Shown: positions 16,642-62,920 of the stretch, one piece after another
Position numbering within the stretch: position 1 is the stretch's first letter
Layout of the letters: each line of letters starts with the position of its first letter
Assembly: GCF_046119375.1 (NCBI RefSeq)
Contig: NW_027362761.1
Span: forward strand, 537,788,001-537,852,000
Origin: Phyllobates terribilis
Lineage: Eukaryota
Direction of reading: 5' to 3'
Length of the DNA stretch: 64,000 bases
Notes under the pieces: generated by a model
Told to the model about the DNA's origin: nothing
What the model saw: the letters and a program-made list of their open reading frames with translations, nothing else
Databases searched by the model: none
Program-made: the position numbers and the translations under genes

Positions 16642-17389
16642 GTAAGTAAGCGCTGTTCTGCGCATGCGTGTGACTGATTATTTGACCATTTGTGCCTGCT
16701 TGTTACCATGCATCACTGCAGTGGGTCAGATCACCTGGAGGAGGGAGGAGGAGATTGTCACCCGCTGCCTGCAGACATTGCCGGCACCCTGTGAACGAAG
16801 ACCTGGAACTGTCAGATCCGCATATTAGGGGTTATTCTACAGTATAGAGCACCCCTTTAAGAGCAGGCATCTCCCTTTAATTCTATAATTACCATTGTGT
16901 GGTCAGCTCTAATTATGTGTTCCCCACTACTATCACCCCCATCCTCTGCCCTCTCACCCGTCATTAATATTATGTGACCCGCCCCCCTTAATTTAGGCAG
17001 CAATTGAAATGTGATGTGAGTATGTAGGAAATGTTTTACCCCTTGAATGGTCCTGGGACCCTGACGCTGATCTTGAGATCAGGGCGATCTCTATGGCTTA
17101 TTGTTTCCTCACCCATGCCCTGTGCTGGTACACTACGGATCCTGTAGGGTCATACGGGCAGCAGTGTGTCCCCGAGCCATGACTTCTGTCACCATCCGTC
17201 CCATGACCCTTATTTTAGGACTAGCGGTTTGGGGAGCCTTCGATTGGTAGCGACGTAAGAAACAGACTTGGGACCATAGTGCGTCCCTGTGTGTATACTA
17301 CCGGGAATCATGGGACGGGAAGGACCAGAGCTCTTCTGTCTGGTTCCCTTAGTCTGTGATCCTCCCCTCCATAATGATCCCCCCTTCCA

Positions 17390-32976: not shown

Positions 32977-33187
32977 ATGGGAAAGGATTACTACAAGATC
33001 TTGGGCATCCCTTCAGGGGCCAACGAAGATGAGATCAAGAAAGCCTATCGCAAAATGGCCCTTAAATACCATCCAGATAAGAACAAGGATGCCAATGCTG
33101 AGGACAAGTTCAAGGAAATCGCAGAAGCCTATGATGTCCTCTGTGATCCCAAAAAGAGAGCAGTATATGACCAGTATGGAGAGGAAG
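32977..33187 (+). CDS. DNAJB5: DNAJB5 coding exon 1 (J-domain: [37 protein letters not shown]...DQYGEEG)
   Basis: J-domain with HPD motif. Acceptor ttccttctag at 32938 (exon starts 32939), ATG at 32977, donor G|gtaagg at 33188, phase 1. Closely matches remembered vertebrate DNAJB5. Confidence 0.96.
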
Positions 33188-34804
33188 GTAAGGACCCTGA
33201 AACCAGAGTGGATGGGTCAATGACTGTGAAGTATGTCCAGTAACATGACCATAAATGCTGTGGGTCTAGCTGCTGAGACCACCACCTATCCCAAGCAAAG
33301 AGTACAAAGTCCCCCCTTGTGATTGATGGCAGTGAGCATAGGTGACCACCACTCCTGTACTCAGTGTTAGCACATGCTTATTACCACTCCATTCATACAG
33401 AGAACTTTGGGAAGCCTGTTCTCATGGTTGGTGGAGATTCCAGGAGATAAATCCCCAGTGATCATACATTTATTACCTATCCTGTTGATGGGCAACAAAT
33501 TTTAGGGTACAACCCAAATGTATAGATTGATGTTTCTTTTAGAAGTGGCCCATATAACCTATTGGAGCATGCTTCATAGGTGTCCTAGTGGGACCAATGT
33601 CATACTTGTATTAGGTTCTTTTCACAACACTTTACGGAACCCTAAATGCAATGCTGATGGCATACATGATGGACACCAGCAGTGTGGAAGTGATTGATTA
33701 GTAATAGGGTACTGCACAGCATTTGACACTTTGCCATTAAAAAAATGGCCCTGCATGCAGTTCTATATATTTTTGCATTAAATATAATGGTGTATGTCCA
33801 TTAGTCTGGGCATTATAATCCCCATGCCCATACCTGCAAGTTAGTCCAGGACTTCATGGAAACATGTGTCACACATTGCGATATCTCATCTAATGATTTC
33901 AACTTACTGCAAGTGTTTCCAAATATCTTTGTTGGACTTTCTGTCGCTGGTCTCAAGTCACACGCAACTCACTTGCCATACACTTCAATGCCAGTTGCAT
34001 GCCAACGCACCCGATCTATAACTTGTTTGCGCTTTGGCTGTTTTTTTTTTACAGCCAAATTGCAGTTGTAAAATAGTCACACAGCAGCGAGTTGAAGACA
34101 ATTTGCACAAGTGTATTTGGTCGTATGACCAAAAACATGATGCCCGGCCCGTCCCATGTTCTGAAAAGATGGCCGTCTGTAACCTGCTATTAGCAGAACT
34201 GAACACTGGCATCTAATGTTGTACATTTCCACTGTTGTTCTGTCATTATGTAGACATCTCCAGATTGCTCTTCAGCAATTATTAATAACCTGGACCTGCC
34301 AGGACTTATTTGTGCAAAACGGCCGTGCTGTTTATACTGAGAAATAATCCCGAGCCAGCTTTCTGTCTGATCATGTGTCTTGTGCACATGAGGATGTTTT
34401 CGTGGTGCTTGGAGTTAGGATATAGAGCAATAAGCAATCCCCTTGCCCAGAGCCACCACTGAGTCTGACTGCTGCAAACAAGACTAGATGTCTCCAGGGC
34501 TAATACATCTAGGGTGACCCTACAAGGAGAACTGTGCACAGCTGTGTAGTATCCAGTAAGAAGCTACATGTTGTCACTTGAAGATGTTTTCTTCACTTCA
34601 AAATGTTAAAAGGGTATTCCCATATCATAAAGTGTTGGCATATCAGTAGGATATGCAACGACTTTGATAGATTGGGGTCCCAGATATTGGACAACTGCCT
34701 ATCGTGAGAAAGAAGGGGCAGATGAGGAGTTACATCATACATTATACTTGGTACACATCCATAGTTTACGTTTTCCTGACGAATATTCTCTGTCTCCGAT
34801 GCAG

Positions 34805-35397
34805 GTCTGAAGACAGGAGGTGGATCATCTGGTAACACTGGGAACTCCTTCCATTACACTTTCCACGGGGACCCTCATGCCACCTTTGCTTCTTTCTTTG
34901 GAGGCTCAAACCCCTTTGACATCTTCTTTGGCTCAGGTCGCACTCGTATGGGCAATGGCTTCGACCACGAAGACATGGACATCGAAGATGATGATGATGA
35001 CCCCTTCAATAACTTTGGGCGTTTTGGGGTGAACGGATTCCACCGGCGGCACCCAGATCAGCTGCACAACCGACGGAAAGTGCAAGACCCCCCTGTCATC
35101 CATGAGCTTAAAGTGTCATTGGAGGAAATCTATCACGGCTGTACCAAACGAATGAAGATCACACGGAGAAGATTGAACCCAGATGGCCGGACAGTAAGAA
35201 CTGAGGACAAGATCCTAAATGTGGTGATCAAGAAAGGTTGGAAGGAGGGAACCAAGATCACCTTTCCTAGAGAGGGGGACGTCACATCAGAAAACATCCC
35301 TGCAGATATTGTGTTCCTACTGAAAGACAAACCACATGCACATTTCAAGAGAGACGGGTCCAACATAGTTTATACGGCCAAGATCACCTTGAAAGAG
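34805..35397 (+). CDS. DNAJB5: DNAJB5 coding exon 2 (G/F-rich region and C-terminal domain I: GLKTGGGSSG...FHGDPHATFASFFGGSNPF...KVQDPPVIHELKVSLEEIYHGCTKRMKITRRRLNPDGRTVRTEDK...TLKE)
   Basis: Acceptor gatgcag|gt at 34804, donor GAG|gtgagt at 35398. Phases 1 to 0 fit the flanking exons. RRRLNPDGRTVRTEDKIL matches DNAJB5. Confidence 0.96.
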
Positions 35398-36799
35398 GTG
35401 AGTGCGCTTTCTAAAAACTTCTTCTGCACTCTAAGGGCATTTTACTATAGTATACAAATGTCTGATTGGTAGGAGTACCAGTGGTGGCTGGATCCAATTT
35501 GGTAATACACACTAGGATATTGACTATTATTAAGGTTTGTAGATTTGAAGACTATATCACACAAATCTTTAAAGGCCGTTGGCTACAATAGCTGAACAAC
35601 AGTCCTAAACAAGCATGTAGAATAGAGGTCTCTTGTATAGCAGATATAATGTCCGGTGACCACCTCAGGTCCTCAACTAGTTGCCACTGATATAGGAAGT
35701 CAAGAGACTCCATGAATAATTCTCTAAAGGTGGCCATACAATTTAGATTGAAGTAGTTTGATTGAGCAACTGATCCTCTGGTGAATAGGGTTGAGATAAC
35801 AATTCACATATTTCCAGTCCAGTGACTTTGTGAGTAGTCAGTGGCAGCCGGTCAGAGCACTGTGAACCTCCTCCTACCAGCCGGCATCCTTGTAGGCCCA
35901 TCACAACATAATCATGATGTCACGTTGGGCTTGCTAATCAGAAGAGGCACCGGGATGCCAGCTGGTAAGAGGAGGCTCATAGGATTCTTGTCCTTCGACC
36001 ACGGATTACTGATATGGCTTGAGGGGTCCTGTAAATCTTTTTGCTCATCTCTCCTCTTGAGTGATCGTTTTGCCAATGCAGCCATACACATTTTGGCCAT
36101 ACATTGTGAATCGTACTGGACAAAGAAGAGAATCTTACTGAGAACATTCTTTACAGGAAAGATCATTCGTAGGGTCAAAAGATCTTTTGTAAGTGCGAGA
36201 AGAGATCTGAACCTAGTTTAAGTAGGGTAGTGCTCCCTGTGCATGCAGTATGAGCTCAGTACCAGATCCTGCTTGTTATGGGTCTATTTCGAGACACTTT
36301 GAGCTCAGCGCTGCTGTCACTGGGTGTGCATCAGGAGTAGACTCTTCACATGATATTTAAACTGACTGTATAGATGATTATATAGAGTCATCTTGTGATG
36401 AATGACTGCTGCTGGGTGGTGGTTTTCATTTTCAACATTTAATAAGGACTTGTCTCTTAATGGAAATCTGACACATTGTAACATACCATTGCGAGTTATT
36501 TCAATAGGGATTTCTTGTTTACTTACAAGGTTCTTGTAACTCTTTAGTAGGAGCTTCTTCAGAGGTTGCTCTCTAATAAGGGCTTCTTCAGGGGTTGCTC
36601 TCTAATAAGGGCTTCTTCAGGGGTTGCTCTCTACTAAGGGCTTCTTCAGGGGTTCTATGAACATAATTCTCCATCAAACTCTACCGCACCCAAGAGCACT
36701 ACAAATATTGGCTGGTGACGAGCTCATGCAGCCTTTATCTATCCCCCATTTCCTCAAGATGGCTGGTCCATCATTGTAAATAAGCACCTGTACTTTGTG

Positions 36800-36951
36800 T
36801 CATCCCCACTTCATTGTAGATTGTAAGCTCTTACGAGCAGGGTGGCCACTATTTTTGCTTTAATTATTGTATTATCTTTAACTATGTTACTTATAACTGT
36901 TGTATTTGAACCTCTGAATTGTAAAGCGCTGTGCAATGTTAGCTCTATATA
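36800..36951 (+). mobile_element. 3' tail of an L2-like LINE, continuing after the MITE at 37670
   Basis: TAGATTGTAAGCTC...GCAGGG ... TGTAAAGCGCT...CTATATA, followed after the MITE by AATAATTATTATT. Confidence 0.55.
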
Positions 36952-37669
36952 CAGTATTTTTCGGACTATAAGACGCACCCCAAATTTTGGGTTGGAATAT
37001 AGGAAAAAATATATTTTTTTATAACATGGGGGTCCGCTTAATATAGTCTGAATTGGGTATCTTACCTGGGGGGCATTGGAGCAAGGGTCACAGGAGGCAG
37101 GGTCCTTCAGAAAGCCGGTGCTCCAGCACCGGGGAGTTGCAGAGGTGGAGCAGGATCGCAGGGCCCTCCGTTCCCTCCATCAGGAACCTGGCGGCTGCAG
37201 CAGAAGAGGTGAGATGGCTGAGGGGCTGGGGATGGTGTCTGCCTGGCGGGCCAGTGTCTGCTCGGGGATAAGGGAGGGGGAGGCGGTGAGCAGCGTGGCA
37301 GATTGGCGTGCGCGGCCATCTTTCTGAAGCTGTGATCTACAGGAAAATGGCCACCCGAGCTACCAGTCTGCGCATGTACCAGCTCAAGCGGCCATTTTGC
37401 TGTAGATCAAAGCTTCAGGAAAATGGCCACGCACACCGGAAAGCCGCGCACGTCACTCTGCCACTCCGCTCACCGGCCCCCAGCATCTCACCTCTTCTGT
37501 TGCTGCTGCCGCCACGTTGGAGGGAATGGAGGGCCCTGTGATCCCGCTCCACAACCACCGCAGCTATCAGGTAAGCTCTACGTTTGGACCATAAGACGCA
37601 CCCCCTCCATTTTCCTCCCAAATTGGGGGGGTGGGGGGGGGGGTGCATCTTATGGTCCGAAAAATGCGG
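36952..37669. mobile_element. Tc1/pogo-type MITE with TA TSD
   Basis: TIRs CAGTATTTTTCGGACTATAAGACGCACC ... GGTGCATCTTATGGTCCGAAAAATGCGG, TA on both sides. Confidence 0.8.
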
Positions 37670-37913
37670 TAAATAATTATTATTAGTAGTAAGGGCTTCT
37701 TCAGAGGTTGCTCTCTAACAAGGGTTTATTCAAGTGGTTACTGTCTAGTAAGGGTTTCTTCTCAGTTTGCTTTTTATTTTTATTGCCACAAGGCTGTGTA
37801 AAACAGAATGTTTTTTACAAAATTGTAGGCAAACTGCAGCAGTTTGTCGTATTGCTGCGTGTCTGGAACTTGCATAATACTGACCTTTATATAATTCTGT
37901 GTGGTTATTATTA

Positions 37914-38618
37914 GGCTGAGTTCACACGATGCATTTTTTCATGCGTTTCCGCGGCGTTTTTGCAGTTGCGGAAAAGCATGAAAAACGCATGGTAGAAGGG
38001 CAGCAATGTTCCCCAATTGAAATCCGCATGTGCTGTGCCCATGATGCGGATTTTTCCGCAGCGTAAACGCTGCGGTCAAAAATCCGCAGCATGTCAATTA
38101 ATTTTGCGGAAACGCTGCTCTTTTGCCGCCATTGACTTGCATTAGACCGCGTGGAATCCGCATCACTGTATATGTTGATGTGCTTTTCATGCGGTCTAAT
38201 GTGCGGATGGTACCCGGGTCGCTGACGTCAGAGTCATGTGACGGGTCACGTGACGCTGACGTCGGAAGGTCCTACAGTCTTCACTGCCGGCAGCCGGGAC
38301 CGATGAAGCAGGACACCGGGGGCCATCAGAGGGTAAAGTATATATTTATTTTTTGACATTCATACACTATATAAATCCATGCTGTTTGCATGGATTTATA
38401 TATAGTGTGAAGTTGACAAGCACTTTCCAAGTGATGCTAAAATCGCTTGGGAAGCGCTTGTCAACCCGCATGCGGAAATGAAAGTGAAGACCGCTTCATT
38501 TCCGCATGTCCCTGGCAGGAAACCGCATGTACAATCCGCATGCGTTTTTTCCTGCCAGAGAGATGCAGAAACGCTCAGGAAAAAATCCTGAGCATTTCTG
38601 CATCGTGTGCACATACCC
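37914..38618. mobile_element. Harbinger-type MITE, 705 bp, an inverted copy of 39475-40303
   Basis: TIRs GGCTGAGTTCACACG / CGTGTGCACATACCC, TTA TSD at 37911-37913 and 38619-38621. Confidence 0.85.
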
Positions 38619-39117
38619 TTACTGTCTTTGCGCTTTCTGTTCTCCCCTATCCCTTTCGCCTCAGCGCCGCAGTGCAGCTCTAGGAAATGCCCCTGCGTGC
38701 GGCTGCCCTTACTTTTTTTTTGCTTCCACCTGGTCACTGCAGAGTTTCCAGAGATGCTATTAAAAGCCACATGTGTATTAATACCCAGAGTTGCCAGGGA
38801 ATCACATGTATTTAAGTGCTGCGAGACTTTGCAGTGCTGGAGAAGATTTTTTTTTCTTTTGGTTTATAAATCTGCTATTGTAGTGTTTATGCAAAAGGGA
38901 TCAGACAGTAAATTGTTACTGAAACCAGACAAGTGATCTTTAAACTTTTAGGGCTTATGTCTGGAACATTGCAGCCTCACCACATACTGTACTGATGTAT
39001 ATGTCGTCCTGATGCCCAATATTACTGCTCTTAAGTTCACACACAGTCAGTTATACTACTCAAGTGTTATTCCAGTTCAATGTGAAAATTCTCCTTATTT
39101 TTGTACATCGGGGGGTA

Positions 39118-40680
39118 GCATTATAGTAGTTATATTCTTGTATATAGGGACAGTATTATAGTAGTTATATTCTTCTACATAGGGACAGTATTATAGTAGT
39201 TATATTCTTGTACATAGGAGCAGTATTATAGTAGCTATATTCTTGTACATAGGAGCAGTATTATAGTAGTTATATTCTTGTACATAGAGGACAGTATTAT
39301 AGTAGTTATATTCTTGTATATAGGGACAGTATTATAGTAGTTATATTCTTCTACATAGGGACAGTATTATAGTAGTTATATTCTTGTATATAGGGACAGT
39401 ATTATAGTAGTTATATTCTTGTACATAGGAGCAGTATTTTAGTAGTTATATTCTTGTACATAGGAGCAGTATTAGGGTATGTGCACACGATGCAGAAATG
39501 CTCAGGATTTTTTCCTGAGCGTTTCTGCATCTCTCTGGCAGGAAAAAACGCATGCGGATTGTACATGCGGTTTCCTGCCAGGGACATGCGGAAATGAAGC
39601 GGTCTTCACTTTCATTTCCGCATGCGGGTTGACAAGCGCTTCCCAAGCGATTTTAGCATCACTTGGAAAGTGCTTATGGATTTATATAGTGTGTGAATGT
39701 CCAAAAATAAAAAATAAATCTATACTTTACCCTCTGATGGCCCCCGGTGTCCTGCTTCATCGGTCCCGGCTGCCGGCAGTGAAGACTGTAGGACCTTCCG
39801 ACGTCAGCATCACGTGACCCGTCACATGACTCTGACGTCAGCGAAGGTCCTTCATTCAACCGCGAAGTGCGCGGGAAGCCGGCAGGAGCGCTGCGCGGGC
39901 CGTCAGAAGGTGAGAATATATATATTTTTTATTTTATTCTTTTTTTTTTAATGGTACCTGGGTCTGGATGAGAGTCCTCTCATCCACACCCGGGTACCAT
40001 CCGCACATTAGACTGCATGAAAAGCGCATCAACATATACAGTGATGCGGATTCCATGCGGTCTAATGCAAGTCAATGGCGGCAAAAGAGCAGCGTTTCCG
40101 CAAAATTAATTGACATGCTGCAGATTTTTGACCGCAGCGTTTACGCTGCGGAAAAATCCGCATCATGGGCACAGCACATGCGGATTTCAATTGGGGAACA
40201 TTGCTGCCCTTCTACCATGCGTTTTTCATGCATTTCCGCGGCGTTTACGCAACTGCAAAAACGCCGCGGAAACGCATGAAAAACGCATCGTGTGAACTCA
40301 GCCTTATAGTAGTTATATTCTTGTACATAGGGGGCAGTATTATAGTAGTTATATTCTTGTACATAGGGGGCAGTATTATAGTAGTTATATTCTTGTACAT
40401 AGGAGGTGGTATTATAGTAGTTATATTTGTGTACATAGGAGCAGTATTATAGTAGTTATATTCTTGTACATAGGGAGCAGTATTATAGTAGCTATATTGT
40501 ACATAGGGGGCAGTATTATAGTAGTTATATTCTTGTACATGGGGGCAGTATTATAGTAGTTTTATTCTTGTACATAGGGGGCAGTATTATAGTAGTTTTA
40601 TTCTTGTACATAGGGGGCAGTATTATAGTAGTTATGTCCTTGTATATAGGGAGCAGTATTGTGGTATTTTTATACATAGG
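39118..40680 (+). repeat. 36-bp minisatellite (same family as 1333-3348) interrupted by a MITE at 39475-40303
   Basis: Tandem units are visible. Confidence 0.92.
39475..40303. mobile_element. Harbinger-type MITE, 829 bp
   Basis: TIRs GGGTATGTGCACACG / CGTGTGAACTCAGCC, TTA TSD at 39472-39474 and 40304-40306. Confidence 0.85.
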
Positions 40681-42909
40681 TGGCAATTTCACACTATTGC
40701 TGTTTAGCAGGTTTCCTTTTTTTCTGATTCAGTCTTGCTCTGTACTTCCATGTTCTGGAGTTGCAGGGGTTAACCGGTAAGCTAAGGGATCTTTGTGTAG
40801 CTGCATGAAGCCATGTCCTGAAAATGTGCCAAGGTGAATAGCTGTGCGCCATTAAAGGTGCGAGCCTCACAGCAGCACTCCCTGCGCTCCCGCGGGATTG
40901 CGATGTGGACGTTGTTGCAGCCTCGTCCATATTTAGCACCTCTCCGGTTCCAGGAATAGTCAGGGTCAGGTTCTGCTCCAGGCATGTAAATTTCTAAGGA
41001 GGGCAGAATTTTGTTTCCTGGCCGGTGATAGACGCAGACTACTATGGGTGCAATTACATCTAGTGTCCTCTGTGGGGGGGCTTACTCTGAATCTAGGGTA
41101 GGGAGAAGGTTGCGGATTTGAAGGAGAACTTCCGAGCTGGAGGGAATAATGTTAAAACTCTAAAATAGGGACATTGATAGATGGCTGTCATCTGATACAG
41201 GAACTTACTGTTCCAGGCACCGCAGAATATGAGTTTTCATCTTAAATTTTATTGCCCATGAATAGAATGCCAGCATGACAGTGAAGACTGACACTTTGCG
41301 TTTGTGGAAACAGAATCTATAATTATAGTTTAGTGACAGATCTTCTCATCAATGAGGATTTGCTACAATTGCCTAAGACCTCTACTGTCCCTCAGAAATA
41401 AAGGGATGCTTCTTAATCTTGGCCTGCACGTTGACGCTCCATTGTCCCTCTGTGCAGCGCAATGGCAGAATGGCCCAACTAGGAGAATGGGCAAGCTGTA
41501 GTTTCCTGCACGGCCCAGAGTCCTGCTGGGGTGAGAAACACTCCACTTCGTCCTCAGGATCAGCGGGGATCCAGAGAACTTTTATCAGATGGGAATACAC
41601 CTACAATGTGAAGCCCAACATTAAATCCAGTATTGTCATCAACTTCTATTCCTATGTGGAAACAGCCAACAAGATGCTGTTTACAGATCTTACTTACACC
41701 ATTTAGTACTTTGAGTGCACAGGGGTGTAATATTGTGAATTAGGGGTATTTCCATTTCTGTGATGAAATATTACTAGGATCTTTTATCACTGAGGGTCAG
41801 TTTCAGATATCTAAAGTTTTCCTTCATGCTTATGATGGGTGGACCCCCCAATCATAAAGTGATGGCATATCCTAAAGATAGTGATGACATGTTCCATAAA
41901 TATGGCATTAAACCTTTAACATTCACAGACTACGCAGGCGTTATTAATAAGGGTGGAGCGGCACAAGGAGGATTTGCAGAGTTGAGATCATAGGTGACTA
42001 AGTGTAGTTGGAAATAGTTACGTGTAATGATGCATTTCATTTATGATTTTCCTGTATAAAACACGCTGGTCGTAACGAATGGCTGCGTCTCCATCCTCAT
42101 TTACCATGCAGCTGGGGTGACTCACAAAGATTTCAGCTGAGGTTACAAGACAACTTTGGCTATATATGTCACCCGGCCAAAGATCGCTGCATGGCACTTG
42201 CCAGGGGCTTTTTCCGGTCACAGTACCTTGTGGGTCGCCAAAGTTGCCATGTAGCCAGAGCCTTAAAGTGGTTATCCGATCTTGTCAGTATTCACTCGCC
42301 AGCATCGAGAGGGTGACCGCAAGTATGCAATTTGCATACATGCGGTCACGTGCCAACTAGACGTGCATGGGCTCTCTCAATGCAAATGTATTGAATGAGG
42401 TCAAACACGTCTAGTCGGAATGTGGCCAGAAGTATTCTAATTGCGTACTTGCAGTCAAATGACCACCCTCTCCCAGCGTCGAGCGCTTATGCTGTGAGGA
42501 TTCACAAGTCTGCAGTCACATAGAGTGACTGCAGACTTGTAGCCTAAGGCCGTAAAGCCCATGTAACATAGGGCCAATTCCCCTTGCCACAGCCAAAAGA
42601 GCTGAATGCCCATAACTTCATACACGACATTTGTCGGGTAGCTTCTATCCCTCCTTTAGTCAGTGTGGTGCATCAGGCACCATCTACATTGTAGTCTACC
42701 CATCTGTAAGACACCGCTGTCCTGCCATCTCCACCCCGTCACTTATACTTCATGACATTACCATCCAATCAGTCTGTGTATTCATGCCCTGAAATGCTCT
42801 GTGCTGCTGGGAAATCTCTTTTCACTAGAACAAGATCAGCACTATAGGTTATAATGAGTTAGCTCTCTGGCCCTACCCTCTTATTGACCCAATACATTTC
42901 TTTTTTCAG

Positions 42910-43143
42910 GCTCTGTGTGGCTGCACCGTCAACATTCCCACCATCGATGGCCGGGTCATCCCGCTACCCTGCAGCGACGTCATCAAACCAGGAACCGTCA
43001 AACGGCTACGAGGTGAAGGATTGCCTTTCCCCAAAGTCCCCACCCAGCGCGGCGACCTAATAGTAGAGTTTCAAGTACGATTTCCAGACAGAATACCACA
43101 ACCAACCCGTGAACTTCTTAAACAGCACCTGCCATGTTCCTAG
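42910..43143 (+). CDS. DNAJB5: DNAJB5 last coding exon (ALCGCTVNIPTIDGRVIPLPC...LKQHLPCS*)
   Basis: Acceptor ttttttcag at 42909, TAG at 43141-43143. Spliced CDS 211+593+234=1038 nt, giving 345 aa. The C-terminus KQHLPCS matches DNAJB5. Missing from the ORF track. Confidence 0.96.
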   Translation, partial: ALCGCTVNIPTIDGRVIPLPCSDVIKPGTVKRLRGEGLPFPKVPTQRGDLIVEFQVRFPDRIPQPTRELLKQHLPCS

Positions 43144-45920: not shown

Positions 45921-46529
45921 CTGGCTATACATATTACTTGCGGTCTGTCTTCATTCAATGTGGTTTGCTGTATGTATTTTTAAAGAAACTTCCCCTCTGG
46001 GTAGAAGATAATGGATGTGGTGCAGACACACACGTGCTATACAATCCATATGCCCCATAAAAAGGTCATTGTGATTTCTGAGAGTGGGACGGACACCGAT
46101 CTTCTAGGCTGTCTCATAGTGGCTGGAGTTCCTCTTTTGCAGGTCTTTAAAACTCTGGGACCCAAAGACTATTACCTAGATTGTCCGCTTTTTACGCTAG
46201 GCTTGTGTGGGTGTATTCATATACATCGTTGTAAGGGAGGATCCTAAAATAAGCAAGTACATGACAAGATGTCAAACAGGTAACACCACAAACCTTTGAA
46301 ATATTGTAACAATAAATATAGTTAAAAGAATTACGGATTTATACTGCCCAATCTATAGCTGTATGAAACCCATCTAACTATAAAACTGGCCACAAATCAG
46401 AGCTCAACTTGCTGCCGCATGATTGTGAGGGAGATGAGCAGCCATCAGACCTGGTGCTGTCTTGTATGATGGATCTTCTAAATTTTGCTAGTAAAATCTA
46501 TAGACGAGAATGAAGTTACAATAACCTTA

Positions 46530-46830
46530 TAATACTACTCCTATGTACAAGAATATAACTGCTATAATACTGCCCCCTATGTACAAGAATATAACTACTA
46601 TAATACTGCCCCTATGTACAAGAATATAACTACTCTAATACTTATCCCTGTATACAAGAATATAACTACTATAATACTGCCCCCCTATGTACAAGAATAT
46701 AACTACTATAATACTGCCCCTATGTACAAGAATATAACTACTATAATACTGCCCCCTATGTACAAGAATATAACTACTATATTACTGCTCCTATGTACAA
46801 GAATATAACTACTATAATACTGCCCCCTAT
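46530..46830 (-). repeat. 36-bp minisatellite family, reverse orientation
   Basis: ATGTACAAGAATATAACTACTATAATACTGCCCC units. Confidence 0.92.
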
Positions 46831-47950
46831 GTGGACGAACGTGAATCTTAACAAGAAGACTTTTCATATGTGACTGGCAGCAGGACCTATGACACCTATT
46901 ATGGTCCTGTTAGAATCCTGCAGCAGAGTTTCTTTATCATCGCTGACACCTTGGCTGCTCCATAGATAGCGAGGTATGAGTCACATGCAATGAATAGCAC
47001 CAACTGTTTGTGCTGACTTTTTTTCCATTTTGCACTTGAGAACATGACAGCTCTTCAGTTAATATGATTAAAAGCACTGAGGTCTCTGCCAACACAGCCC
47101 AGCATTACCCTCCGTGCCAGGCAACAGTTCAGTCTCCCCCAGCAGAAGGGAGAGAATCCGTCCTGCAGAGGGGAGAAAGCCTCAGATTGGCACACTTGCC
47201 TTAGGGTATGCTCACTCAGAGTTTTGTGTGGATTTTTTTTTTAGCCCCAAAAATCCACATATAAAAACTGGTTCTAAAAAGCATGTGATTTTTTTTGGGG
47301 GGGTTTAAAAGGTCTTATGGATTTTAGATGGTTTGATGTGTTTTTTCACATGTTTTTCTTGAGAATTTTTTCATTTTGGGTGTAACAATGTGGTTTGGGT
47401 TTTGACACGTTTCAGATGCAAAATCCCACTCTGCAAACATGCAAAAGAATTTTTACACATGGTAAGCACGCAGAAAAAAATGCGACTTATTTTCTGCTTC
47501 AAATTAAAGGGAACCTTGTTGCAAGCAAATTTGAAGCATTATTTTTTTTTAATGAGGATTTAGACACTAAATATCCACACTAAAAAAAAAACCATAAAAG
47601 CTTCATGTGAGCACACACTTGGGATATGTGCACCATTGACTTTTTGAAGTGGGAGCGCTCCATAATCCGCCTTAAGCGCTAATTAAACACTCAAAGTAAT
47701 AAACATATGTACTGCAATGTAAAAACGACTTGCTGGGCAGATGTTCAGTCTTTTGAACTTTTTTTTTTAACTGTCAGGTTTTAAAGATGCAAAACAGTTA
47801 AAAAAGTGGCCTGTCCATTCTTCAGGCAGCTTGGAAGCCGCTCACTAATTCATTCAATGCAAGTTAGAAAAAAAAAAGCTGGTGGCAAAAAAAAGTCACA
47901 AAAAAGACCAAAAAAACCTCTGGCGTGTTCTGAAGCAACTTAGAGATCAC

Positions 47951-55200: not shown

Positions 55201-55499
55201 ATGCAATATTAGCAGATACCTCCAATTAGAAATTTAGTATAGTTCTTCTGATAAACTATGTCTCTTACCCCATGTGTAGGGCATTGCGGCAGCTTAGGTA
55301 TCCATGGTTATGACAACTAACTCATTATATGAGTGCTCGTAACCATGGATACCTAAGCTACTGCAATGCCCTGTTCATGGGATAAGTGACATAGTGTATC
55401 AGATGAACTATACTACATTTCTAATTGGAGGTATTTGCTAATATTATTATGCGTACTACATATTGGGATAGGCTCTTGGAGATGGTAATACCCCTTTAA
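52213..55499. mobile_element. TTAA-flanked T2-type MITE split into 52213-52283 and 55205-55499 by a CR1 insertion
   Basis: TTAAAGGGGG...CCAAGATCCTATCCCAA on the left, TTGGGATAGGCTCTTGG...CCCCTTTAA on the right. Confidence 0.6.
52468..55204 (+). mobile_element. 5'-truncated CR1-clade LINE; ORF2 (APE endonuclease plus RT) disrupted by a frameshift and stops
   Basis: IIMGDFNYP, LDLILTN, SDH (APE); KSPGPDG, NYRPVSLTS, QHGF, DFSKAFD, SGVPQGSVL, FADDTKL (RT); RPHLEYCVQFWSP, GFFTVRAVKLWNSLP. Frameshift at the T-run near 53395, TGA at about 54026 and 54330, tail ...TATGTTACTATG. Confidence 0.95.
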
Positions 55500-55867
55500 G
55501 TTCCCACGGTGCCAAAACACAGCGGATTCTCCACTATGTATTCGCTTATGGAAAAACTGTGATTTACAGCGTCAGCAAAGTGCATGAGATTTTCAGAAAT
55601 CTGCACCTGCTGGGAAATATATCCACAGTGTAAGCTAACAGGAGCTGCGGGTGTGAGATCCACGGCATGTCAATTTATGCTGCAGATAAAGTTGCGAGTT
55701 TCACTCTTTACCATGCAAAGGGTAAAATGTCTGGCTTCTCGCAACTTTTTTTTTTTTGCAATGATATCCGCAGTGGTATATACTGTTGCTGGTCCTGAAG
55801 CCCCTACTATGTGTAGCACAGGCGATCGCAGCTTCAGGTCTCCTAAGAGGTCTACTGAACACAGTAA

Positions 55868-57895
55868 GGCTATGTTCATACATCATGTTTTTTTCAGTGT
55901 TTTTTGCTGCAGATTTTTATGCAAATTTTCAGCTGCCTTTTGCAGTACCAGCAAAGTCTATGAGATTCCAGAATTCTTAGTTCACACATCATGGGTTTCT
56001 TTTCAGGATTTTGTGCCTTTCATGGTTTTTAGGAAAATAGAGCATGTCACTTCTTTCAGCATTTTTTTAACCCATAGGAAGTAATGGGCGGTGAAAAAAA
56101 ATGCTGAAAAAATGCACCAAAAACACAGGTAAATTTTTTTTCAGCATTTTTGCAGCATTTTTTGTGCATTAACCAGAATGAGATTTTTTTTTATCACTGA
56201 ACTTTATGTACATGCATAACAGAGACAAAAGGACAGTGAAAAAAACGCTGAAAAAACGCACCTGCAAGAAAACTGCAACAAAAATCCTGAACACCCTCCT
56301 GGCAAGAGATCATGTTTTACTGCAGAAAATGAACCCAAAACAAACAATGATGTGTGAACATAGCCTAAAAAGTAAAAAAAAAAGTTTTAAAACATAAAAA
56401 AAACCCACAAAAGTTCAAATCACCCCACTTTTGCCCCATTAAAAATAAAAAAATACACATATTTGGTATCGCTGCGTTCAGAAATGTCAGATCTATCAAA
56501 ATATAAAGTAAAATAATCTAATCCTTAAACAGCGTAATGAGAAAAAAATCAAAAACCCAGAATTACGTTTTTTTTGGTCGCTGCAATAAAATGCAATAAG
56601 AGGCGATCAAAACATCGTATGTACCCCAAAATGGTATCATTAAAAATGTCAAAAACCATGGTATTGCACTTTTTTTTTTGCAATTTCTCCCCATTTGGAT
56701 TTTTTTCCCCCCGTTTTCCAGTACACTATATGGTAAAATCAGGGATGTCATTCAAAAGTACAACTCGCTCCGCAAAAAAACAAGCCCTCATATGGCTATA
56801 TGGCTCTGGGAAGAAAGGGAGGAAAAAATTAAAACAGCCAGGGTGTGAAAGGGTTAAGGGCTCTTTCGAATGTCCGTGATAATCGGTCCGATGTGGGATT
56901 GCAGTGCATGGGCTGGCCGGGCATGATGACTTCATATATTGCTATACATCAGGAGATGCACGGCCAGCCCATGCACTGCGATCCCACATCGGACCGATTA
57001 TCACGGACGTCTAAAATAGCTCAAAAACTTTTAAATGAAATTCTACAAGCAATGCAAGCACTTAGTAAGCATTTAAGTGCCTTTACACACGACATTATTT
57101 GTTGTTGGAATAGCCAGATGACACCTTCCCTTTAGGCTATGTTCCCACAATGAGCTTTTGATGTTGCAGATTTTTCTGCACCTATTAAATAAATTTGGTT
57201 GCTTATGTTTTTTCGTGCATTTTTTTGACACTGAGATTTTTGTCTCTTTTTGATGTCAACTTTCTTGATACAGTCATGTGCAGATTACATGTGTTTTTGA
57301 TGCGTTTCCGCTGCGGAAATTCATATGTGTTTTTTACCTGCGGATTTTCTGCATCTTATACAAGTCTTATGGGAAAAATCTGCACAATAAAACACAGCGT
57401 ACCCTCGAAAAAAAAATCAACATGTTGCGGATTTGAAACAGGCACCGCAGGTCAGTATATGCTGCGTAAAGAAAAGCACGGAGGGCAGGAGATTTCTATA
57501 AATCCCATCCACTTTCTTGGAACTGTAAGACGCTGCGTTTTTGTTGCAGCGAAAATGCACAGTATCAAAATTGTGGGCATGCAGCTTTAGGCCTCATTCA
57601 CACGTCAGTATTTTGCAGCAGTATTTATATGCCAAAACCAGTGTCTTTAAAACAATTATAGTTTTACGCTGTAAGCTCCACTCCTGGCTTTGTCATATAA
57701 ACACTGATGCAAAATATAGATGTGTGCATAAGGTCTTAAGCGGGATTTAAAGCCTTTTGACTTGACCGTATCGTTTGGAGGAATCCGCCTCAGTGAGGTG
57801 ACATTAGGTTACGTTCACACTGAGTTTTTTGAGTTTAGGAGGAAAGTTTCAGCTCCAAAAAAACTTCTCAAAAATCTCAGTGTGAACATACACTT
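55868..57895. mobile_element. Cluster of MITEs and DNA-transposon fragments upstream of hwa
   Basis: GGCTATGTTCACA...TGTGAACATAGCC at about 55868-56364, a GGGTTAA end near 56858, further TTAGG-type termini near 57133, 57588 and 57804. Confidence 0.6.
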
Positions 57896-58582
57896 AAACT
57901 TCAGGTTTTAAAAATTGAAATGGGTAGAATACTTGAAAGCAGTTTTTGAGGAGGATCATTTTTTAAACCTTTTTTCGAACAACTCTGTCTCAGCATAGCC
58001 TAAGGATATGTTCACGCAGAGTATTTTGATGTGAATAATCATGTTGGATCTGTTCAAAATTCTTTGTATGAACATATTTTGAGGACCACTTAGAACAGGC
58101 CCCTGCCTTATTGGCCTATTGTAACCTTAACATCATAATCACCATTATATGCTGATGTCCATTAAGCATTAGCTTTACCTCTTGACCCCTCCTCGCTCCA
58201 CTCACTGTTCTCCAGGTGTTACCCGTGGGCCGACACCGGAATAATTGATGACCCTTCTCTTAAACCCCTTATTTACAGCCAGGACATCATCACTGTTTAA
58301 GATTCTTGTATATTTATATGACTGTTGTGCTTTGGCCAGTTTGGAGGAGACTAGTGGATCAGTGGTTTACAAGTCTACATGGTCGTGGTGGAACTACAAC
58401 CCTTAGCATGTTGTAAGCTTTCAGGGCATGCTGGGAAATGTAGTCTTACTACAGCTTTCAGTCCATTGAGAAGAAGTCCACCAAACCTGACTCCTGATCC
58501 TTACTCCTGGTTCCTACTATTGAGCCTTCACTTTCCTTTCCCCCTTTATCCTATTCCAAATACTCTAGGCTCTGTTAATGAC

Positions 58583-59215
58583 ATGGCGTCGGTGGTTCCC
58601 TCTCTGCCTCCCTTAATTGGGGGGAACCCTATGGCCCAGGCTGCTCCATCTGTAGAGGAGAAGTTGATTTTGCAGCCATCACTTACGCTCCTGGTTTTTA
58701 TCCTTCTCCCATGTGTGGTTTTGTTGTTCCTCCTAAATTGCTTTTTGATTTTCTTTCGCCTTCCTGCCCTGTCCCTGGAAAAAAGGGGCAAAAGGCGAGG
58801 AGGAATATCAAGGGGCAGCAAGCAGCCAGGACAAAACAGGCCAGAGCCCAGCTGCCCAGAGAAGTCCTCATATGACAGCTATTCTGGGGTCGTCAGTCAA
58901 GGTTTGGAGGCTACATTGGCCCTGGGTGCAAGTGCTCACACACCCAGCGATAGACTCCAGTCCACCAGAGAATGGTGTTATAAGCAGAACGAGACCCCAG
59001 TGAGACCCTACCGTCTGTGCACACCACATGCCATGTCCATGCCCCGTGGCCCCTCAAGGACATGTCCATGCCCCGTGGCCTTGTCACCAAACAGAGGGGT
59101 AAGCTGGAATGAGGTTGAAGATGGGGGAGGTGGCATAACATCGTACAGCGAGCAAGAGACTCCGCAGAATGCCGCTCCACCCAACACGCCAGCCGCTCCG
59201 CAAACCCTCCCTGCG
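58583..59215 (+). CDS. hwa: huluwa orthologue, coding exon 1 (short N-terminus, single TM helix SLTLLVFILLPCVVLLFLLNCFLIFF, basic stop-transfer KRGKRR, PPNTP motif)
   Basis: The TM segment resembles remembered zebrafish Hwa SLALLILVLIPCVLLLLLLNCLF. PPNTP lies at 59177-59191. Donor GCG|gtgagt at 59216, phase 0. Start could instead be ATG 58631 or 58379. Confidence 0.88.
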
Positions 59216-59615
59216 GTGAGTAAGATACTAATAATCAAAAAGCTAAACTCCCCCTTCACCTTCAAAGTAGGTAATGAGAGCACAAAAATGATATTAACTC
59301 AGCAAGACCCCCCCCACCTCTGAAGTCAGCTGCTAGGAATTCAAATCCACCATGCTTTACCCTGCAGGTTACTCAATAGATCGGAGTAACACATCACAAT
59401 CTGCCCTTAATGGAACAGAAAGATAAACTGTGAGACCTTAAACACAAGATTTAGGGCTTGATTCATCATTGCATTTCTACCATTTTTTTTTCTCAATTAT
59501 TGACTTTGTGATTTGCAACAAATTCATCAAATTATTTGTGTCTTTTTTTTCAAGTTGTCTTTTGTTAGCTTTCTAATTTTTTTTTAACATCAATGTAGCT
59601 TTTCCAGATGTTTTA

Positions 59616-60154
59616 GGGTATGTTCACACAGTGCGTTGTTTATGCGGTTTTGATGCGGTAAATCCGCACGGCTTTGTCCCCAAAAACGCATTGCAATCCC
59701 TGTCCCAGCATTTCCTATGAGATTTGGCGAGATCTGTGCACATGATCAGGAATTTTCCTTACAGAATTTCATGTATGGAAAAAGAAGTAGCATGTCCATT
59801 CTTTGTGCGGATTTGCCTGCGTTTTTCCTATACAATGCATTGGAAAAAACACATGGCAAAAACACGCATCAAAAATATGTGGAATTTCCGCAGTGTTTTT
59901 GTTGGCAAGAAGGTGCAGAAACGCTGCAGAAATTTCTGCAAGCAAATACTGATCATGCGCACGTAACCTTAGTCCATGTTCACACTTTCAGTATTTGGTC
60001 AGTCTTTTACATCAGTATTTGTAAGCCAAAACCAGGAGTGGGTGATAAATACAGAAGTGGTGACGTGTTTCTATTATACTTTTCCTCGGATTGTTCCTCT
60101 CCTGGTTTTGGCTTCCAAATACTGATGTAAAATATTGACCATGTGAACGAGGCC
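59616..60154. mobile_element. Two head-to-tail Harbinger-type MITEs (59616-59968, 59972-60154) in hwa intron 1
   Basis: TTA at 59613, 59969 and 60155, with TIR-like GGGTATGTTCACAC / GCACGTAACC and GTCCATGTTCACA / TGTGAACGAGGCC. Confidence 0.7.
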
Positions 60155-61499
60155 TTAGACAGATCCATCCAAAATTTGTCACAACTCTACTCCAGTCCTC
60201 CCCCGGAGTGATTTTATGTACACTAGTGAAAAAGTTGCATCTATAAGACATTTTGCAAAACCTGCAACTTTTTGAGCTAAAAAGTCGCCCAAAAAGTTAA
60301 AAGGCAAAAAAACACCATTTTGATGAATTTGCTGTAAAAACAACAGTGAAAACCACAAGTCAAAAAAGAAAAGTGGCTTAAAAAAATCCAAATAATGAAT
60401 AAGCCACTAAATGTTTTCTGTTTGCAGCGTAAAGCATGTTGGGGGTTGTAGTGTTCTATGTATAGAGTATAACAGCGTCAAATTATGGTCATGCCTGGCT
60501 GTCAGATCTTGCTGGAGGTTGTAGTGATTTTTGTTTATAGCACAATAAAATTGTATTATCATTGGGTCATGTTGGGGGTTGTAGTCTAAGCACTGATTCA
60601 TCAAGAATGGCATTGTTCGGGCCGGTTTTGACGAGGGGCCGTGCTGGAGTCGCCATGCCTCTTCGTGAATCAGGACCGTCAGAGAAGTGGTGTGTCCCTC
60701 CTGTGCGCGCCTTGCCACTGATTATACTCCAGTCCCTGCTGGAGTAAGATTTGTTGCATAATTTTAGCGTAGCTGGCAGTTGTGCCAAAATTATGCGACT
60801 TTTCAAAACTTTTTATGCCAGAAAAATGATGTAAAAGCTTTGTTGAATCAGCTCCTGTTACAGTAGTATGTTTAGTGGTCAGATTTGCTGGGTGTTGTAG
60901 TTCTACACATATAGTATGTTGGCTTTGTATTATGATCAGGTCTTGCTGGAGGTTGTAGTGTTTTCTTGTTTATAGTATAATAGAATTGTATTTTGATCTG
61001 GACATGTTGGGAGTTGTAGTGTTCAATTTATGGGGTGTAATTGTCTTATAGTCATGTCTAGCAGTCGGCTCATGTTGGGGGTTGTAGTGTGCTTTGTTTG
61101 GAGTATACGGCAGACTCCTGTTTCTTGCTGATACAATCCTCACGTTTGTGATCAGGTAACTTTACAGAGATATGTGCGGAGACGTCCATATACGAAGGCA
61201 GAGTTCACATTGGACCCATGATCTACATACCCGTAGCCCAGCACCGAACTCCAATTTTTGGATCATGAAAGGGCTCCAGGTGCAGGTCATGTACATTTTC
61301 CGGAAATGCACACGGTTATATGGAATGGCATTCACTGGGTCAGTGATCATACCCAGTATTCAATTTCCAGTACACACTTGTAATATGGTCATGCTGGGAG
61401 TTGTAGTGTTGTATGTATAGAATGTAATAGAACTTTATTATGGATATGTTGGGAGTTGTAGACTTGTATATTATGCATGTTACCGTCTCTTCTCTTCAG

Positions 61500-61695
61500 G
61501 TAATGACTCCAAAGGGGAAGTTCTGCCATAAGACCAGCACCCAGAGGAAGCCTGTAGGAGCATCGTTGAACCCTTTGGGGTCTATACTGTTTGACCACGC
61601 CAGCAGTATCCCCCCGGATGACACGCCAACTCGAGTTTCAGCCAACAGCAGCTTCCAGGGTCCAGGACTGGATACTGACTTTGGGGTCAGCGCAG
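61500..61695 (+). CDS. hwa: huluwa coding exon 2 (VMTPKGKFCHKTSTQ...ASSIPP...PGLDTDFGVSAG)
   Basis: Acceptor tctcttcag at 61499, donor GCAG|gtgagt at 61696, phases 0 to 1. PGLDTDFGVSAG matches remembered Hwa PGLDSDFGASAG. Confidence 0.9.
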
Positions 61696-61835
61696 GTGAG
61701 TGCATCTAAAGTCCCCAGACATGACGGGAAACTGTAATGGGACCGTATATAGTGTAAGGGAGCACAGCCGCGTGGGATTGTGGACTAGGAGGCACCATTG
61801 TGCCCATCTCCTACATAGCTGATCACGGGTAAAGT

Positions 61836-61951
61836 CCTCATGTTGTCCTCATGTTGTCCTCATGTTGTCCTCATGTTGTCCTCATGTTGTCCTCATGTTG
61901 TCCTCATGTTGTCCTCATGTTGTCCTCATGTTGTCCTCATGTTGTCCTCAC
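61836..61951 (+). repeat. 11-bp tandem repeat (CATGTTGTCCT)n in hwa intron 2
   Basis: About 10 exact copies, ending about 13 nt before the exon-3 acceptor. Confidence 0.95.
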
Positions 61952-61964
61952 GTCTCCCCCGCAG

Positions 61965-62137
61965 GTGTCTCTCTGCACATCTTATCCTCAGACAGTGATT
62001 CCTGCTCCCAGTCCTGGGCCTCAGGGATGGAATGGGATTACTACGACCCCTGTTATATGAGGAAGAACCGGCTCCGTAGAGAAACCTGGCAGAACCACCA
62101 GCTCCCAGTCATCTGCAGCAAGCAATACTGGGTATAA
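61965..62137 (+). CDS. hwa: huluwa last coding exon (GVSLHILSSDSD...WASGMEWDYYDPCY...SKQYWV*)
   Basis: Acceptor ccccgcag at 61964, TAA at 62135-62137. EWDYYDP and terminal KQYWV match the remembered Hwa C-terminus. Spliced CDS 633+196+173=1002 nt, giving 333 aa. Confidence 0.92.
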
Positions 62138-62920
62138 GAGACTGGACACCAATGTGAGGACTACGCAGATCTGCCCCACCCCATCACCCGCCCCCCCCAA
62201 AAAAAAAGTAATCTGCACAGATTGTGCCAACTCCCCTGCAACCCAAAACTGCACCGTTGCTCTCTTGGACCTCACTCATTGTCCCCACCCCGCCCCGCCC
62301 CCAATTATCTCACTAATACCCCCACCAAATTTCAAATTCCTACTTCACATACCGCACCCCCTGTATGAGTGCATAGAATACTGCCTTACACCCTTAGAAT
62401 ATACCGCTATGACACGCTAGTACTGACCCCCTAAGTTCACACACTCTCACCAGCCCCCCCATCTTTACTTGATTCTGTGCTGCACCCCCATATACACTAG
62501 ATCCCACCTTGTTCCTTCCATTGACCTATTTTGCCCACGAGTGCCATTCTTGATTATATATGAATATTGTCCTTCACTCCCGTATTCTTCCAGCGCCCCC
62601 TCCTGACACCCCCCTCCCCTATACACAGAATTATTACCTGCACCCCAGTATTCTACGTCTAGTCTATGGCACCGTGCCACATTAATATGTTGTTTGCGCC
62701 CCTTATCTCACACTTTACCTACTCCCCCCGAGTACACAGCGCCCCCTTCAGGTGACACAAAAGAGGCTATTTCTAATATGTAAAATTAACCCTTTACCCA
62801 ACTCCCTGAAGTTTCCTACCACTCTCACTACTCCCAGCACCCCAATCTGCAGAGTTCTCATCTGGATCTCTCATGTTCAGACATTTTTTTTTATTTTTTA
62901 TTAAATTTAAATTTTTATTA
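62138..62920 (+). promoter_or_regulatory. hwa: hwa 3'UTR: CAC-rich segment followed by CPEs and an ATTAAA hexamer
   Basis: About 34 CAC versus about 7 GTG in 62138-62840 (hand count). TTTTTAT at 62888, 62895 and 62912. ATTAAA at 62900-62905. Confidence 0.55.

What the first reader, a model, noticed from the sequence alone, without database searches (positions are those of the whole stretch)
58583..62137. Three-exon huluwa (hwa) orthologue hidden from the ORF track
Seen: three GT-AG exons with compatible phases (0, then 1) give a 333-aa single-pass membrane protein ending GLDTDFGVSAGVSLHILSSDSD...EWDYYDP...KQYWV. Known: these blocks match my memory of zebrafish and Xenopus Huluwa, the maternal determinant that stabilises beta-catenin through Axin degradation to set the dorsal axis. 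Inference: this is the orthologue in a non-model frog. It has a divergent cytoplasmic middle region and is easily left annotated as uncharacterised.
Basis: partly seen in the sequence, partly recalled or inferred. Interest (0 to 1): 0.85.

Follow-up and report, generated by a model that had tools for sequence, protein, structure and literature searches.

The report
Poison-frog huluwa gene, already annotated
This is the ordinary poison-frog copy of huluwa, the known maternal gene that sets the dorsal body axis; it is already named in public annotation, but the public protein model for this genome skips 72 residues that hold the gene's essential signalling motif.

Summary
Exons 58583-59215, 61500-61695 and 61965-62137 (+), all GT..AG with phases 0 and 1, give a 333-aa single-pass membrane protein. 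It aligns end to end with 'protein huluwa-like' of about 25 frogs (92% to Ranitomeya variabilis), with Xenopus laevis huluwa, and by profile with teleost, lungfish, salamander, caecilian and lizard huluwa. It carries every conserved block: the TM helix, PPNTP, HKTST and the GPGLDTDFG...EWDYYDP...KQYWV tail. Medaka hwa has the same three coding exons and the same upstream DnaJ-B neighbour. RNA contigs of two related species are spliced at both proposed junctions.

It is neither hidden nor uncharacterised. The window encodes exactly XP_073537566.1, 'protein huluwa-like [Phyllobates terribilis]', 261 aa, with the same start and stop. That model uses a weaker internal donor (58999|GTGAGA) and so drops aa 140-211, including PPNTP, which published work shows to be indispensable.

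RNA-library contigs that match the window without differences cover introns as deeply as exons. They therefore settle neither the splicing nor maternal expression in this species.

Verdict: a correct identification of a known gene, plus a modest gene-model correction. The scan's other notes on this gene (s1-218026, s1-217998) lie on this same window, not on other DNA.

The parts
58340..58582 (+). 5' UTR (minimum extent), contiguous with exon 1
   Evidence: The 1650-nt RNA contig of related organism B is collinear from 58340. In that relative, indels totalling 26 nt lie in 58519-58582. They break the frame from the upstream in-frame ATG at 58379, so 58583 is the start.
58583..59215 (+). Coding exon 1 (aa 1-211): 33-aa N-terminal ectodomain, TM helix, poorly conserved cytoplasmic region, PPNTP motif
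   Evidence: pN/pS is about 0.34 over codons 1-118 against the relative's transcript.
58682..58756 (+). Transmembrane helix, aa 34-58 (LTLLVFILLPCVVLLFLLNCFLIFF)
   Evidence: Hydropathy maximum. The P43-C44 and N52-C53-F54-L55 columns are invariant in 19 frogs. The helix aligns with the teleost and lizard TM.
58997..59005 (+). Internal alternative donor CCA|GTGAGA (cut 58999/59000), used by the public 261-aa model
   Evidence: Splicing 58583-58999 to 61500 reproduces P0004 (XP_073537566.1) exactly. It matches fewer than 7 of 9 positions of MAG|GTRAGT, against 7 of 9 for the 59215 donor.
59177..59191 (+). PPNTP motif (aa 199-203), counterpart of zebrafish PPNSP/Ser168
   Evidence: P-P-N is invariant in 19 frogs and aligned with teleost PPNSP. 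Functional data are in PMC11576741 and PMC12758137.
59216..61499 (+). Intron 1 (2284 nt), full of dispersed repeats
   Evidence: Skipped in the relatives' RNA contigs. Medaka has its intron at the same protein position, just after PPNSP.
61500..61695 (+). Coding exon 2 (aa 212-277, first base of codon 277), with HKTST (61527-61541) and the start of the GPGLDTDFG block
   Evidence: HKTST aligns with teleost RRSST/RRCST.
61696..61964 (+). Intron 2 (269 nt), holding an 11-bp tandem repeat at 61834-61950
   Evidence: Joint 'GT..AG cut +4' in organisms B and C. Tandem repeat. Medaka has the same intron position, SAG|VSL.
61965..62137 (+). Coding exon 3 (aa 277-333 plus TAA): the most conserved block, VSLHILSSDSDS...EWDYYDP...KQYWV
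62138..62746 (+). 3' UTR (minimum extent)
   Evidence: The relative's contig is collinear to 62536. Contigs that match the window without differences reach 62746. The only AATAAA/ATTAAA downstream is ATTAAA at 62900.
32980..43131 (+). Upstream neighbour: DNAJB1-like gene (exons 32980-33234, 34972-35406, 42907-43131), a synteny anchor
   Evidence: tblastx against the medaka DnaJ gene that lies just upstream of medaka hwa on the same strand. Pfam DnaJ_C, E 6e-24. Best solved relative is DNAJB1, E 2.5e-52.

Best explanation
Window 58583-62137 (+) is the single-copy huluwa (hwa) gene of a dendrobatid poison frog, almost certainly Phyllobates terribilis. Its conserved product is the 333-aa three-exon protein. 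This has a 33-residue ectodomain, one TM helix (aa 34-58) and a largely disordered cytoplasmic tail carrying PPNTP (199-203), HKTST (221-225) and a highly conserved C-terminal block (265-333). By inference from zebrafish and Xenopus work, the mRNA is maternal. At the future dorsal membrane the protein binds Axin and is phosphorylated on the motif Thr by Axin-bound GSK3 and/or CDK16. The phospho-motif then inhibits GSK3 as a pseudosubstrate. Shown here: gene structure, orthology, motif retention, synteny, and splicing in relatives. Inferred: maternal expression, phosphorylation, and axis-inducing activity. The public 261-aa model for this genome, which skips aa 140-211, is most likely a mis-chosen or minor donor.
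For: Identity: end-to-end BLASTP over 333/333 aa, 91.6% to R. variabilis, and 45-75% to 18 other frogs whose hits cover aa 1-333 or 3-333. X. laevis 'protein huluwa isoform X2' gives E 1e-26 over aa 1-275. A frog profile finds teleost 'protein huluwa' at E about 1e-48, plus lungfish, salamander, caecilian and lizards. Motifs: the TM, PPN[ST]P, [KR][TS]ST and GPGLD.DFG...EWDYYDP...KQYW[VIL] columns are all kept. Thr in place of Ser is functionally tolerated (S168T) and Asn is required. Structure and synteny: medaka hwa has the same two intron positions and a DnaJ-B gene upstream on the same strand, as in the window. Copy number: one copy in the window. Constraint: pN/pS about 0.34 in the least conserved part. 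Splicing: contigs of organisms B (depth 131) and C show both junctions and keep 59000-59204, i.e. the long exon 1. Long versus short form: the D. tinctorius and R. variabilis models are 333 aa; no other hit lacks this segment; and the 59215 donor is the only phase-0 GT in exon 1 that matches at least 7 of 9 consensus positions.
Against: There is no direct evidence of mature, spliced mRNA from the window's own species. Organism-A contigs have depth 2-4 and cover introns (e.g. 60767-61081, 59579-59724) as well as exons, and one crosses the 59215 donor unspliced. The tissues of all runs are coded, so maternal or ovarian expression is unknown. The only public product for this genome is the 261-aa form, which may rest on RNA evidence I could not see. 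Zebrafish Hwa itself was not retrieved; the link to it runs through other teleost 'protein huluwa' entries and the motif peptide quoted in PMC12758137.
Confidence: 0.9

Rival explanations
1. The annotated 261-aa protein (donor 58999) is the real or main product in this species. It would be a Hwa lacking PPNTP, either inactive or acting as a natural antagonist of the full-length form.
For: Splicing at 58999|GTGAGA reproduces XP_073537566.1 exactly, and this is the only product on record for the species. The skip is in frame (216 nt).
Against: The donor is weaker than the one at 59215. The skipped segment holds the invariant P-P-N columns and the conserved WNEVED and SYSEQET blocks. No other species' model has this deletion. 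Relatives' abundant RNA contigs retain the segment. One contig that matches the window exactly crosses 58999/59000 unspliced (58946-59094). Another breaks within one base of 59215 (59081-59214, with 67 further letters not in the intron). Deleting PPNSP abolishes activity in zebrafish Hwa.
Confidence: 0.07
2. Translation starts at the upstream in-frame ATG at 58379, giving a 401-aa protein with a longer ectodomain.
For: The ORF 58379..59323 is open and in frame with 58583. The relative's transcript starts upstream of 58379. The Engystomops model has a 40-aa N-terminal extension.
Against: All other orthologues begin M[AVG][ST][VL]..PS at the 58583 position. The relative has indels summing to 26 nt in 58519-58582, which break that frame. 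The Kozak context is T at -3 for 58379 against G at -3 and G at +4 for 58583.
Confidence: 0.03
3. The locus is an unexpressed or decaying copy in this lineage, as huluwa prepatterning is reported absent in annual killifish.
For: Runs that match the window exactly show only background depth over the gene. The title of bioRxiv 10.1101/2021.04.16.440199 says axis formation can proceed 'in absence of Huluwa prepatterning'.
Against: The 333-codon frame is intact, the splice sites are consensus, every functional motif is kept and pN/pS is about 0.34. Closely related species express a spliced transcript at depth about 131. The sampled tissues are unknown and may simply not be ovary.
Confidence: 0.03

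Closest known systems
Huluwa (Hwa) of zebrafish and Xenopus laevis (Yan et al. 2018, Science 362:eaat1045, as cited in PMC11252917; mechanism in PMC11576741 and PMC12758137)
   Same: Single-pass membrane protein with a short ectodomain. The cytoplasmic PPN[S/T]P motif is followed about 20 residues later by a basic-[ST]ST motif. The C-terminal GPGLDSDFG...EWDYYDP...KQYWV block is shared. The gene has three coding exons, with intron 1 between the two motifs, and a DnaJ-B gene upstream (seen in medaka).
   Different: Thr replaces Ser in the phospho-motif, as in nearly all frogs including X. laevis. HK replaces RR before the [ST]ST core. The protein is longer (333 aa, against a 23-aa ectodomain plus a 248-aa intracellular domain quoted for zebrafish in PMC12758137) because of a longer ectodomain and middle region. 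Function in this species is untested.
XP_073537566.1, 'protein huluwa-like [Phyllobates terribilis]' (P0004, 261 aa)
   Same: Same locus. The gene span is 3555 bp, equal to 58583-62137. It has the same ATG, stop, exon 2 and exon 3, and is 100% identical over aa 1-140 and 212-333.
   Different: It uses the internal donor at 58999 and so lacks aa 140-211 (72 aa), including PPNTP.
XP_073409229.1 (Dendrobates tinctorius) and XP_077136854.1 (Ranitomeya variabilis), 'protein huluwa-like', 333 aa
   Same: Same length and collinear over all three exons, with about 89-98% identity per exon for D. tinctorius and 91.6% overall for R. variabilis.
   Different: Only scattered substitutions, mostly in the ectodomain and middle region.
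LRP6 intracellular PPP(S/T)P motifs (functional analogue, not a relative)
   Same: A membrane-tethered proline-rich S/T-P motif that, once phosphorylated, inhibits GSK3 as a pseudosubstrate (PMC12758137).
   Different: Hwa has one motif, not five, with Asn in place of the third Pro. It has no ligand-binding ectodomain, acts independently of Wnt ligand, and has no sequence homology outside the motif.

Membership tests
Huluwa (Hwa) | Single-pass membrane protein with a short N-terminal ectodomain and a large cytoplasmic tail | tested here: met
   There is one hydrophobic stretch, aa 34-58, followed by a K/R-rich stretch (positive-inside). It aligns with the TM of frog, teleost and lizard Hwa. 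Topology is inferred, not measured.
Huluwa (Hwa) | Cytoplasmic PPNSP motif with essential Asn and a phosphorylatable Ser/Thr | tested here: met
   PPNTP at aa 199-203 lies in the column of teleost PPNSP. P-P-N is invariant in 19 frogs. S168T keeps activity and N167 is required.
Huluwa (Hwa) | Second conserved motif, RRSST, about 13-22 residues downstream of the phospho-site | tested here: met
   HKTST at aa 221-225, 20-24 residues after Thr202, aligns with teleost RRSST/RRCST/HRSST. The basic pair is H-K instead of R-R, as in frogs generally ([HNRC]KTST; X. laevis HTSST).
Huluwa (Hwa) | Conserved C-terminal block GPGLDSDFG.SAG.S...SSDS...EWDYYDP...KQYWV | tested here: met
   Aa 265-333; nearly identical across frogs and recognisable in teleosts, lungfish and lizards.
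Huluwa (Hwa) | Significant sequence similarity to the experimentally characterised proteins (X. laevis, zebrafish) | tested here: met
   X. laevis 'protein huluwa isoform X2': E 1e-26, 42% over aa 1-275. Teleost 'protein huluwa': E about 1e-48 with the frog profile. The zebrafish sequence itself was not retrieved.
Huluwa (Hwa) | Orthologous locus: same exon structure and gene neighbourhood, single copy | tested here: met
   Medaka hwa has the same two intron positions and a DnaJ-B gene upstream on the same strand. The window holds one copy. The rest of the genome was not searched.
Huluwa (Hwa) | Maternal mRNA, with protein on the future dorsal side | not testable with these tools
   Run tissues are coded. 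Own-species runs show only background depth, equal in introns and exons.
Huluwa (Hwa) | Induces a beta-catenin-dependent secondary axis; loss gives ventralised embryos | not testable with these tools
   This needs a bench assay.

The most novel reading that the evidence does not exclude
The in-frame internal donor at 58999 is really used in this frog and yields a membrane-anchored Hwa isoform. That isoform keeps the TM, HKTST and the C-terminal block but lacks the GSK3-inhibiting PPNTP motif. It could be a built-in inactive or dominant-negative form that tunes the dose of dorsal determinant.
Probability: 0.07. Interest if true: 0.45.

Novelty: already known. Interest (0 to 1): 0.12.

Why it matters
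Huluwa is the long-sought maternal dorsal determinant of fish and frogs, so a correct orthologue in every sequenced amphibian is useful for comparative work. This includes poison frogs, whose eggs are large and yolky. This one adds no new biology. The gene family, its motifs and this gene's name are already public. The practical point is narrower. The only public protein for this genome omits the one motif shown to be indispensable for signalling. Anyone taking that record at face value could wrongly conclude that this species has a PPNxP-less Hwa. The 333-aa model should replace it or be added.

Tried and rejected
1. Own-species RNA support. Organism-A runs hold at most a quarter of the exon-1 words, at depth 2-4, with introns covered equally. 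They are uninformative for splicing or expression.
2. Pfam. There is no family for Hwa, for P0001 or for the exon pieces.
3. Fetching DNA of the public P. terribilis locus. The sample file was too large; only the gene span came back.
4. X. tropicalis context. That protein is not on record in the contig index.
5. Spliced 333-aa protein as a query. It has no reference form, so it was not sent to the large database tools. Exon 1 by reference, the near-identical P0001 and local BLAST in scripts were used instead.
6. Second copy in the window. None was found.
7. Structure prediction was skipped. The tail is described as disordered (PMC11576741) and a fold would not bear on the question.
8. The third large protein search and the representative-library search were left unused, because the identity was already unambiguous.
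Full report
OBSERVATION.
- An ATG at 58583, with G at -3 and +4, opens exon 1 (58583-59215, 633 nt, donor GCG|GTGAGT).
- Exon 2 is 61500-61695 (196 nt), behind a pyrimidine-rich acceptor, with donor CAG|GTGAGT.
- Exon 3 is 61965-62137 (173 nt), ending in TAA.
- Phases are 0 and 1, and the spliced frame is 333 codons.
- The only strongly hydrophobic stretch is aa 34-58. It is followed by a K/R-rich stretch, which fits an N-out, C-in single-pass topology (inference).
- All the quoted C-terminal strings are present.
- 'Hidden from the ORF track' is overstated, because each exon sits inside a listed ORF.

WHAT IT IS. Exon 1 alone (by reference) found 26 proteins, nearly all named 'protein huluwa-like', from frogs.
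- The spliced protein aligns over its full 333 residues with R. variabilis (91.6%), and over aa 1-333 or 3-333 with 18 further frogs at 45-75% identity. It aligns with X. laevis 'protein huluwa isoform X2' over aa 1-275 (E 1e-26).
- A profile of 19 frog sequences (A1) reached caecilian, salamander, lungfish, many teleost 'protein huluwa' entries (E about 1e-48) and lizards. There is one hit per species, so the family looks single-copy.
- The cross-vertebrate alignment shows the window protein keeps every conserved element. These are the TM helix with its P-C and N-C columns, PPNTP (aa 199-203) in the column of teleost PPNSP, HKTST (221-225) in the column of RRSST, and the GPGLDTDFG...SSDSDS...EWDYYDP...KQYWV tail.
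- Pfam has no model for the family.

ORTHOLOGY BEYOND SIMILARITY.
- The medaka hwa locus (L001) has the same three coding exons. Intron 1 falls immediately after PPNSP and intron 2 falls in SAG|VSL.
- A DnaJ/DnaJ_C gene lies just upstream of medaka hwa on the same strand.
- The window has a collinear DNAJB1-like gene on the + strand at 32980-43131, upstream of hwa.
- The window holds only one hwa copy.
- Over codons 1-118, the least conserved part, 17 synonymous and 17 non-synonymous differences from a related species' transcript give pN/pS of about 0.34.

TRANSCRIPT EVIDENCE.
- RNA contigs of two related species (organisms B and C; the B contig is 1650 nt at depth 131) are collinear with 58340-59204, 61501-61691, 61961-62263 and 62316-62536.
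- The first joint carries 12 replaced letters, exactly the length of 59205-59215 plus 61500, so the cut is 59215/61500. The second is 'GT..AG, cut +4', which is 61695/61965. Both proposed junctions therefore exist in homologous mRNAs.
- Runs of organism A give contigs with no differences from the window, so they are presumably the same species. They are uninformative: depth is 2-4, and intronic pieces (59579-59724, 60767-61081) are as deep as exonic ones.
- Among these organism-A contigs, one crosses the 59215 donor unspliced (59063-59244). One crosses 58999/59000 unspliced (58946-59094). One stops at 59214, with 67 further letters that do not continue into the intron; this is suggestive of the 59215 splice, but its partner piece was not listed.
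- Tissues are coded, so maternal expression could not be assessed.

The gene is already annotated.
- P0004, XP_073537566.1 'protein huluwa-like [Phyllobates terribilis]', 261 aa, is 100% identical to the window protein over aa 1-140 and 212-333.
- Splicing 58583-58999 to 61500 reproduces it letter for letter. Its gene span in the public assembly is 3555 bp, the same as 58583-62137. The window is thus almost certainly that genome.
- The public model uses an internal, in-frame donor (CCA|GTGAGA) and drops 72 residues (aa 140-211) that include PPNTP. It is the only product on record for the species.
- Several points favour the long form. The 59215 donor is the only phase-0 GT in exon 1 that matches at least 7 of 9 consensus positions. 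The D. tinctorius and R. variabilis models are 333 aa. No other species' model has the deletion. Relatives' transcripts retain the segment. The intron position after the motif is shared with medaka.
- Deletion of PPNSP abolishes zebrafish Hwa activity in embryos and cells (PMC11576741, PMC12758137). A PPNTP-less protein would therefore be expected to be inactive.

HOW IT MOST LIKELY WORKS (inferred from the family).
- Hwa is a maternal transmembrane dorsal determinant (PMC11252917).
- It binds Axin. Its PPNSP Ser is phosphorylated by GSK3, CDK16 or CDK2. The phospho-motif inhibits GSK3 more strongly than LRP6's PPPSP. This stabilises beta-catenin and allows SIAH1-dependent Axin degradation, and oligomerisation boosts the effect. 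An earlier model invokes tankyrase.
- The window protein has Thr at the phospho-site, and S168T is tolerated. It has the required Asn, for which only Pro and Cys are partly tolerated.
- PPNTP is the normal state in frogs, X. laevis included, so it is not a peculiarity of this species.

NOVELTY AND VERDICT. It is named as such in this genome and in dozens of others. What this check adds is a gene-model correction, 333 aa in place of 261 aa. The alternative that the short form is a real regulatory isoform has low probability (about 0.07). Two other first-stage notes on this same window touch the gene. Note s1-218026 (PPNTP/HKTST) agrees with what I tested. Note s1-217998 (3' UTR CAC cluster) was not examined.

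Noticed in passing
window 61914-62069 versus P0021 aa 265-316, and P0019: The C-termini of X. laevis 'protein huluwa isoform X2' and of the X. tropicalis 'hypothetical protein' match a different reading frame of exon 3 (48% over 52 aa, E 0.002). They lack the conserved EWDYYDP...KQYWV tail. These public isoforms look like frame-shifted readings of the last exon. The Dendropsophus X2 and Aquarana models also stop aligning near aa 275-281.
   Followed up: partly
window 32980-43131 (+): A DNAJB1-like gene with at least three exons (32980-33234, 34972-35406, 42907-43131), collinear with the DnaJ gene that sits just upstream of hwa in medaka. The dnajb-hwa linkage is shared between a teleost (medaka) and this frog.
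   Followed up: partly
window 17379-23186: A 5.8-kb satellite: a 26-bp unit (CCCCCCTTCCATAGTCAGTGATCACC) in 222 copies at 99% identity, strongly C-rich on the + strand (GC skew about -0.6).
   Followed up: no
window 12172-13576: A 30-bp tandem array (47 copies, 85% identity) that creates long artefactual ORFs on both strands (up to 534 aa, no Pfam hit).
   Followed up: partly
window 59970-60145 (hwa intron 1): A short element of about 170 bp with inverted-repeat character ('opposite strands' joints). It has enormous summed contig depth (7,000-54,000) in the RNA-library runs of all four dendrobatid organisms, so it is a very abundant, transcribed dispersed repeat (MITE/SINE-like). A related copy seems to lie near 57300-57700.
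   Followed up: no
window 60430-61470 (hwa intron 1), also 58400-58450: About ten dispersed copies of a motif like CATGTTGGGRGTTGTAGTG, in both intron 1 and the 5' flank.
   Followed up: no
window 61834-61950 (hwa intron 2): A perfect 11-bp microsatellite, GTCCTCATGTT x 10.6, just upstream of the exon-3 acceptor. It generates the spurious N-terminal part of the 91-aa ORF that contains exon 3.
   Followed up: no
window 52490-56084 (+): A decayed LINE: an endonuclease (Exo_endo_phos_2, E 2e-14) and a reverse-transcriptase (RVT_1, E 4e-14) domain, split over several ORFs.
   Followed up: partly
window 1330-2255, 3120-3349, 39120-39474, 40304-40660, 46528-46832 (inverted): Five arrays of one 35-36-bp tandem unit (TTATAGTAGTTATATTCTTGTAYATAGGGGGCAGTA) are scattered through the window. 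They are probably the internal repeat of a dispersed element.
   Followed up: no
P0024, P0025, P0026, P0064 (Anomaloglossus, Bufo gargarizans, Lithobates pipiens, Ranitomeya imitator): Several public 'huluwa-like' models are only 177-183 aa. They start at an internal Met (window aa 151 in Anomaloglossus; near aa 153 and 162 in Lithobates and Bufo) and so lack the TM helix. With the 261-aa model here, this suggests hwa is often mis-modelled in frog annotations.
   Followed up: partly
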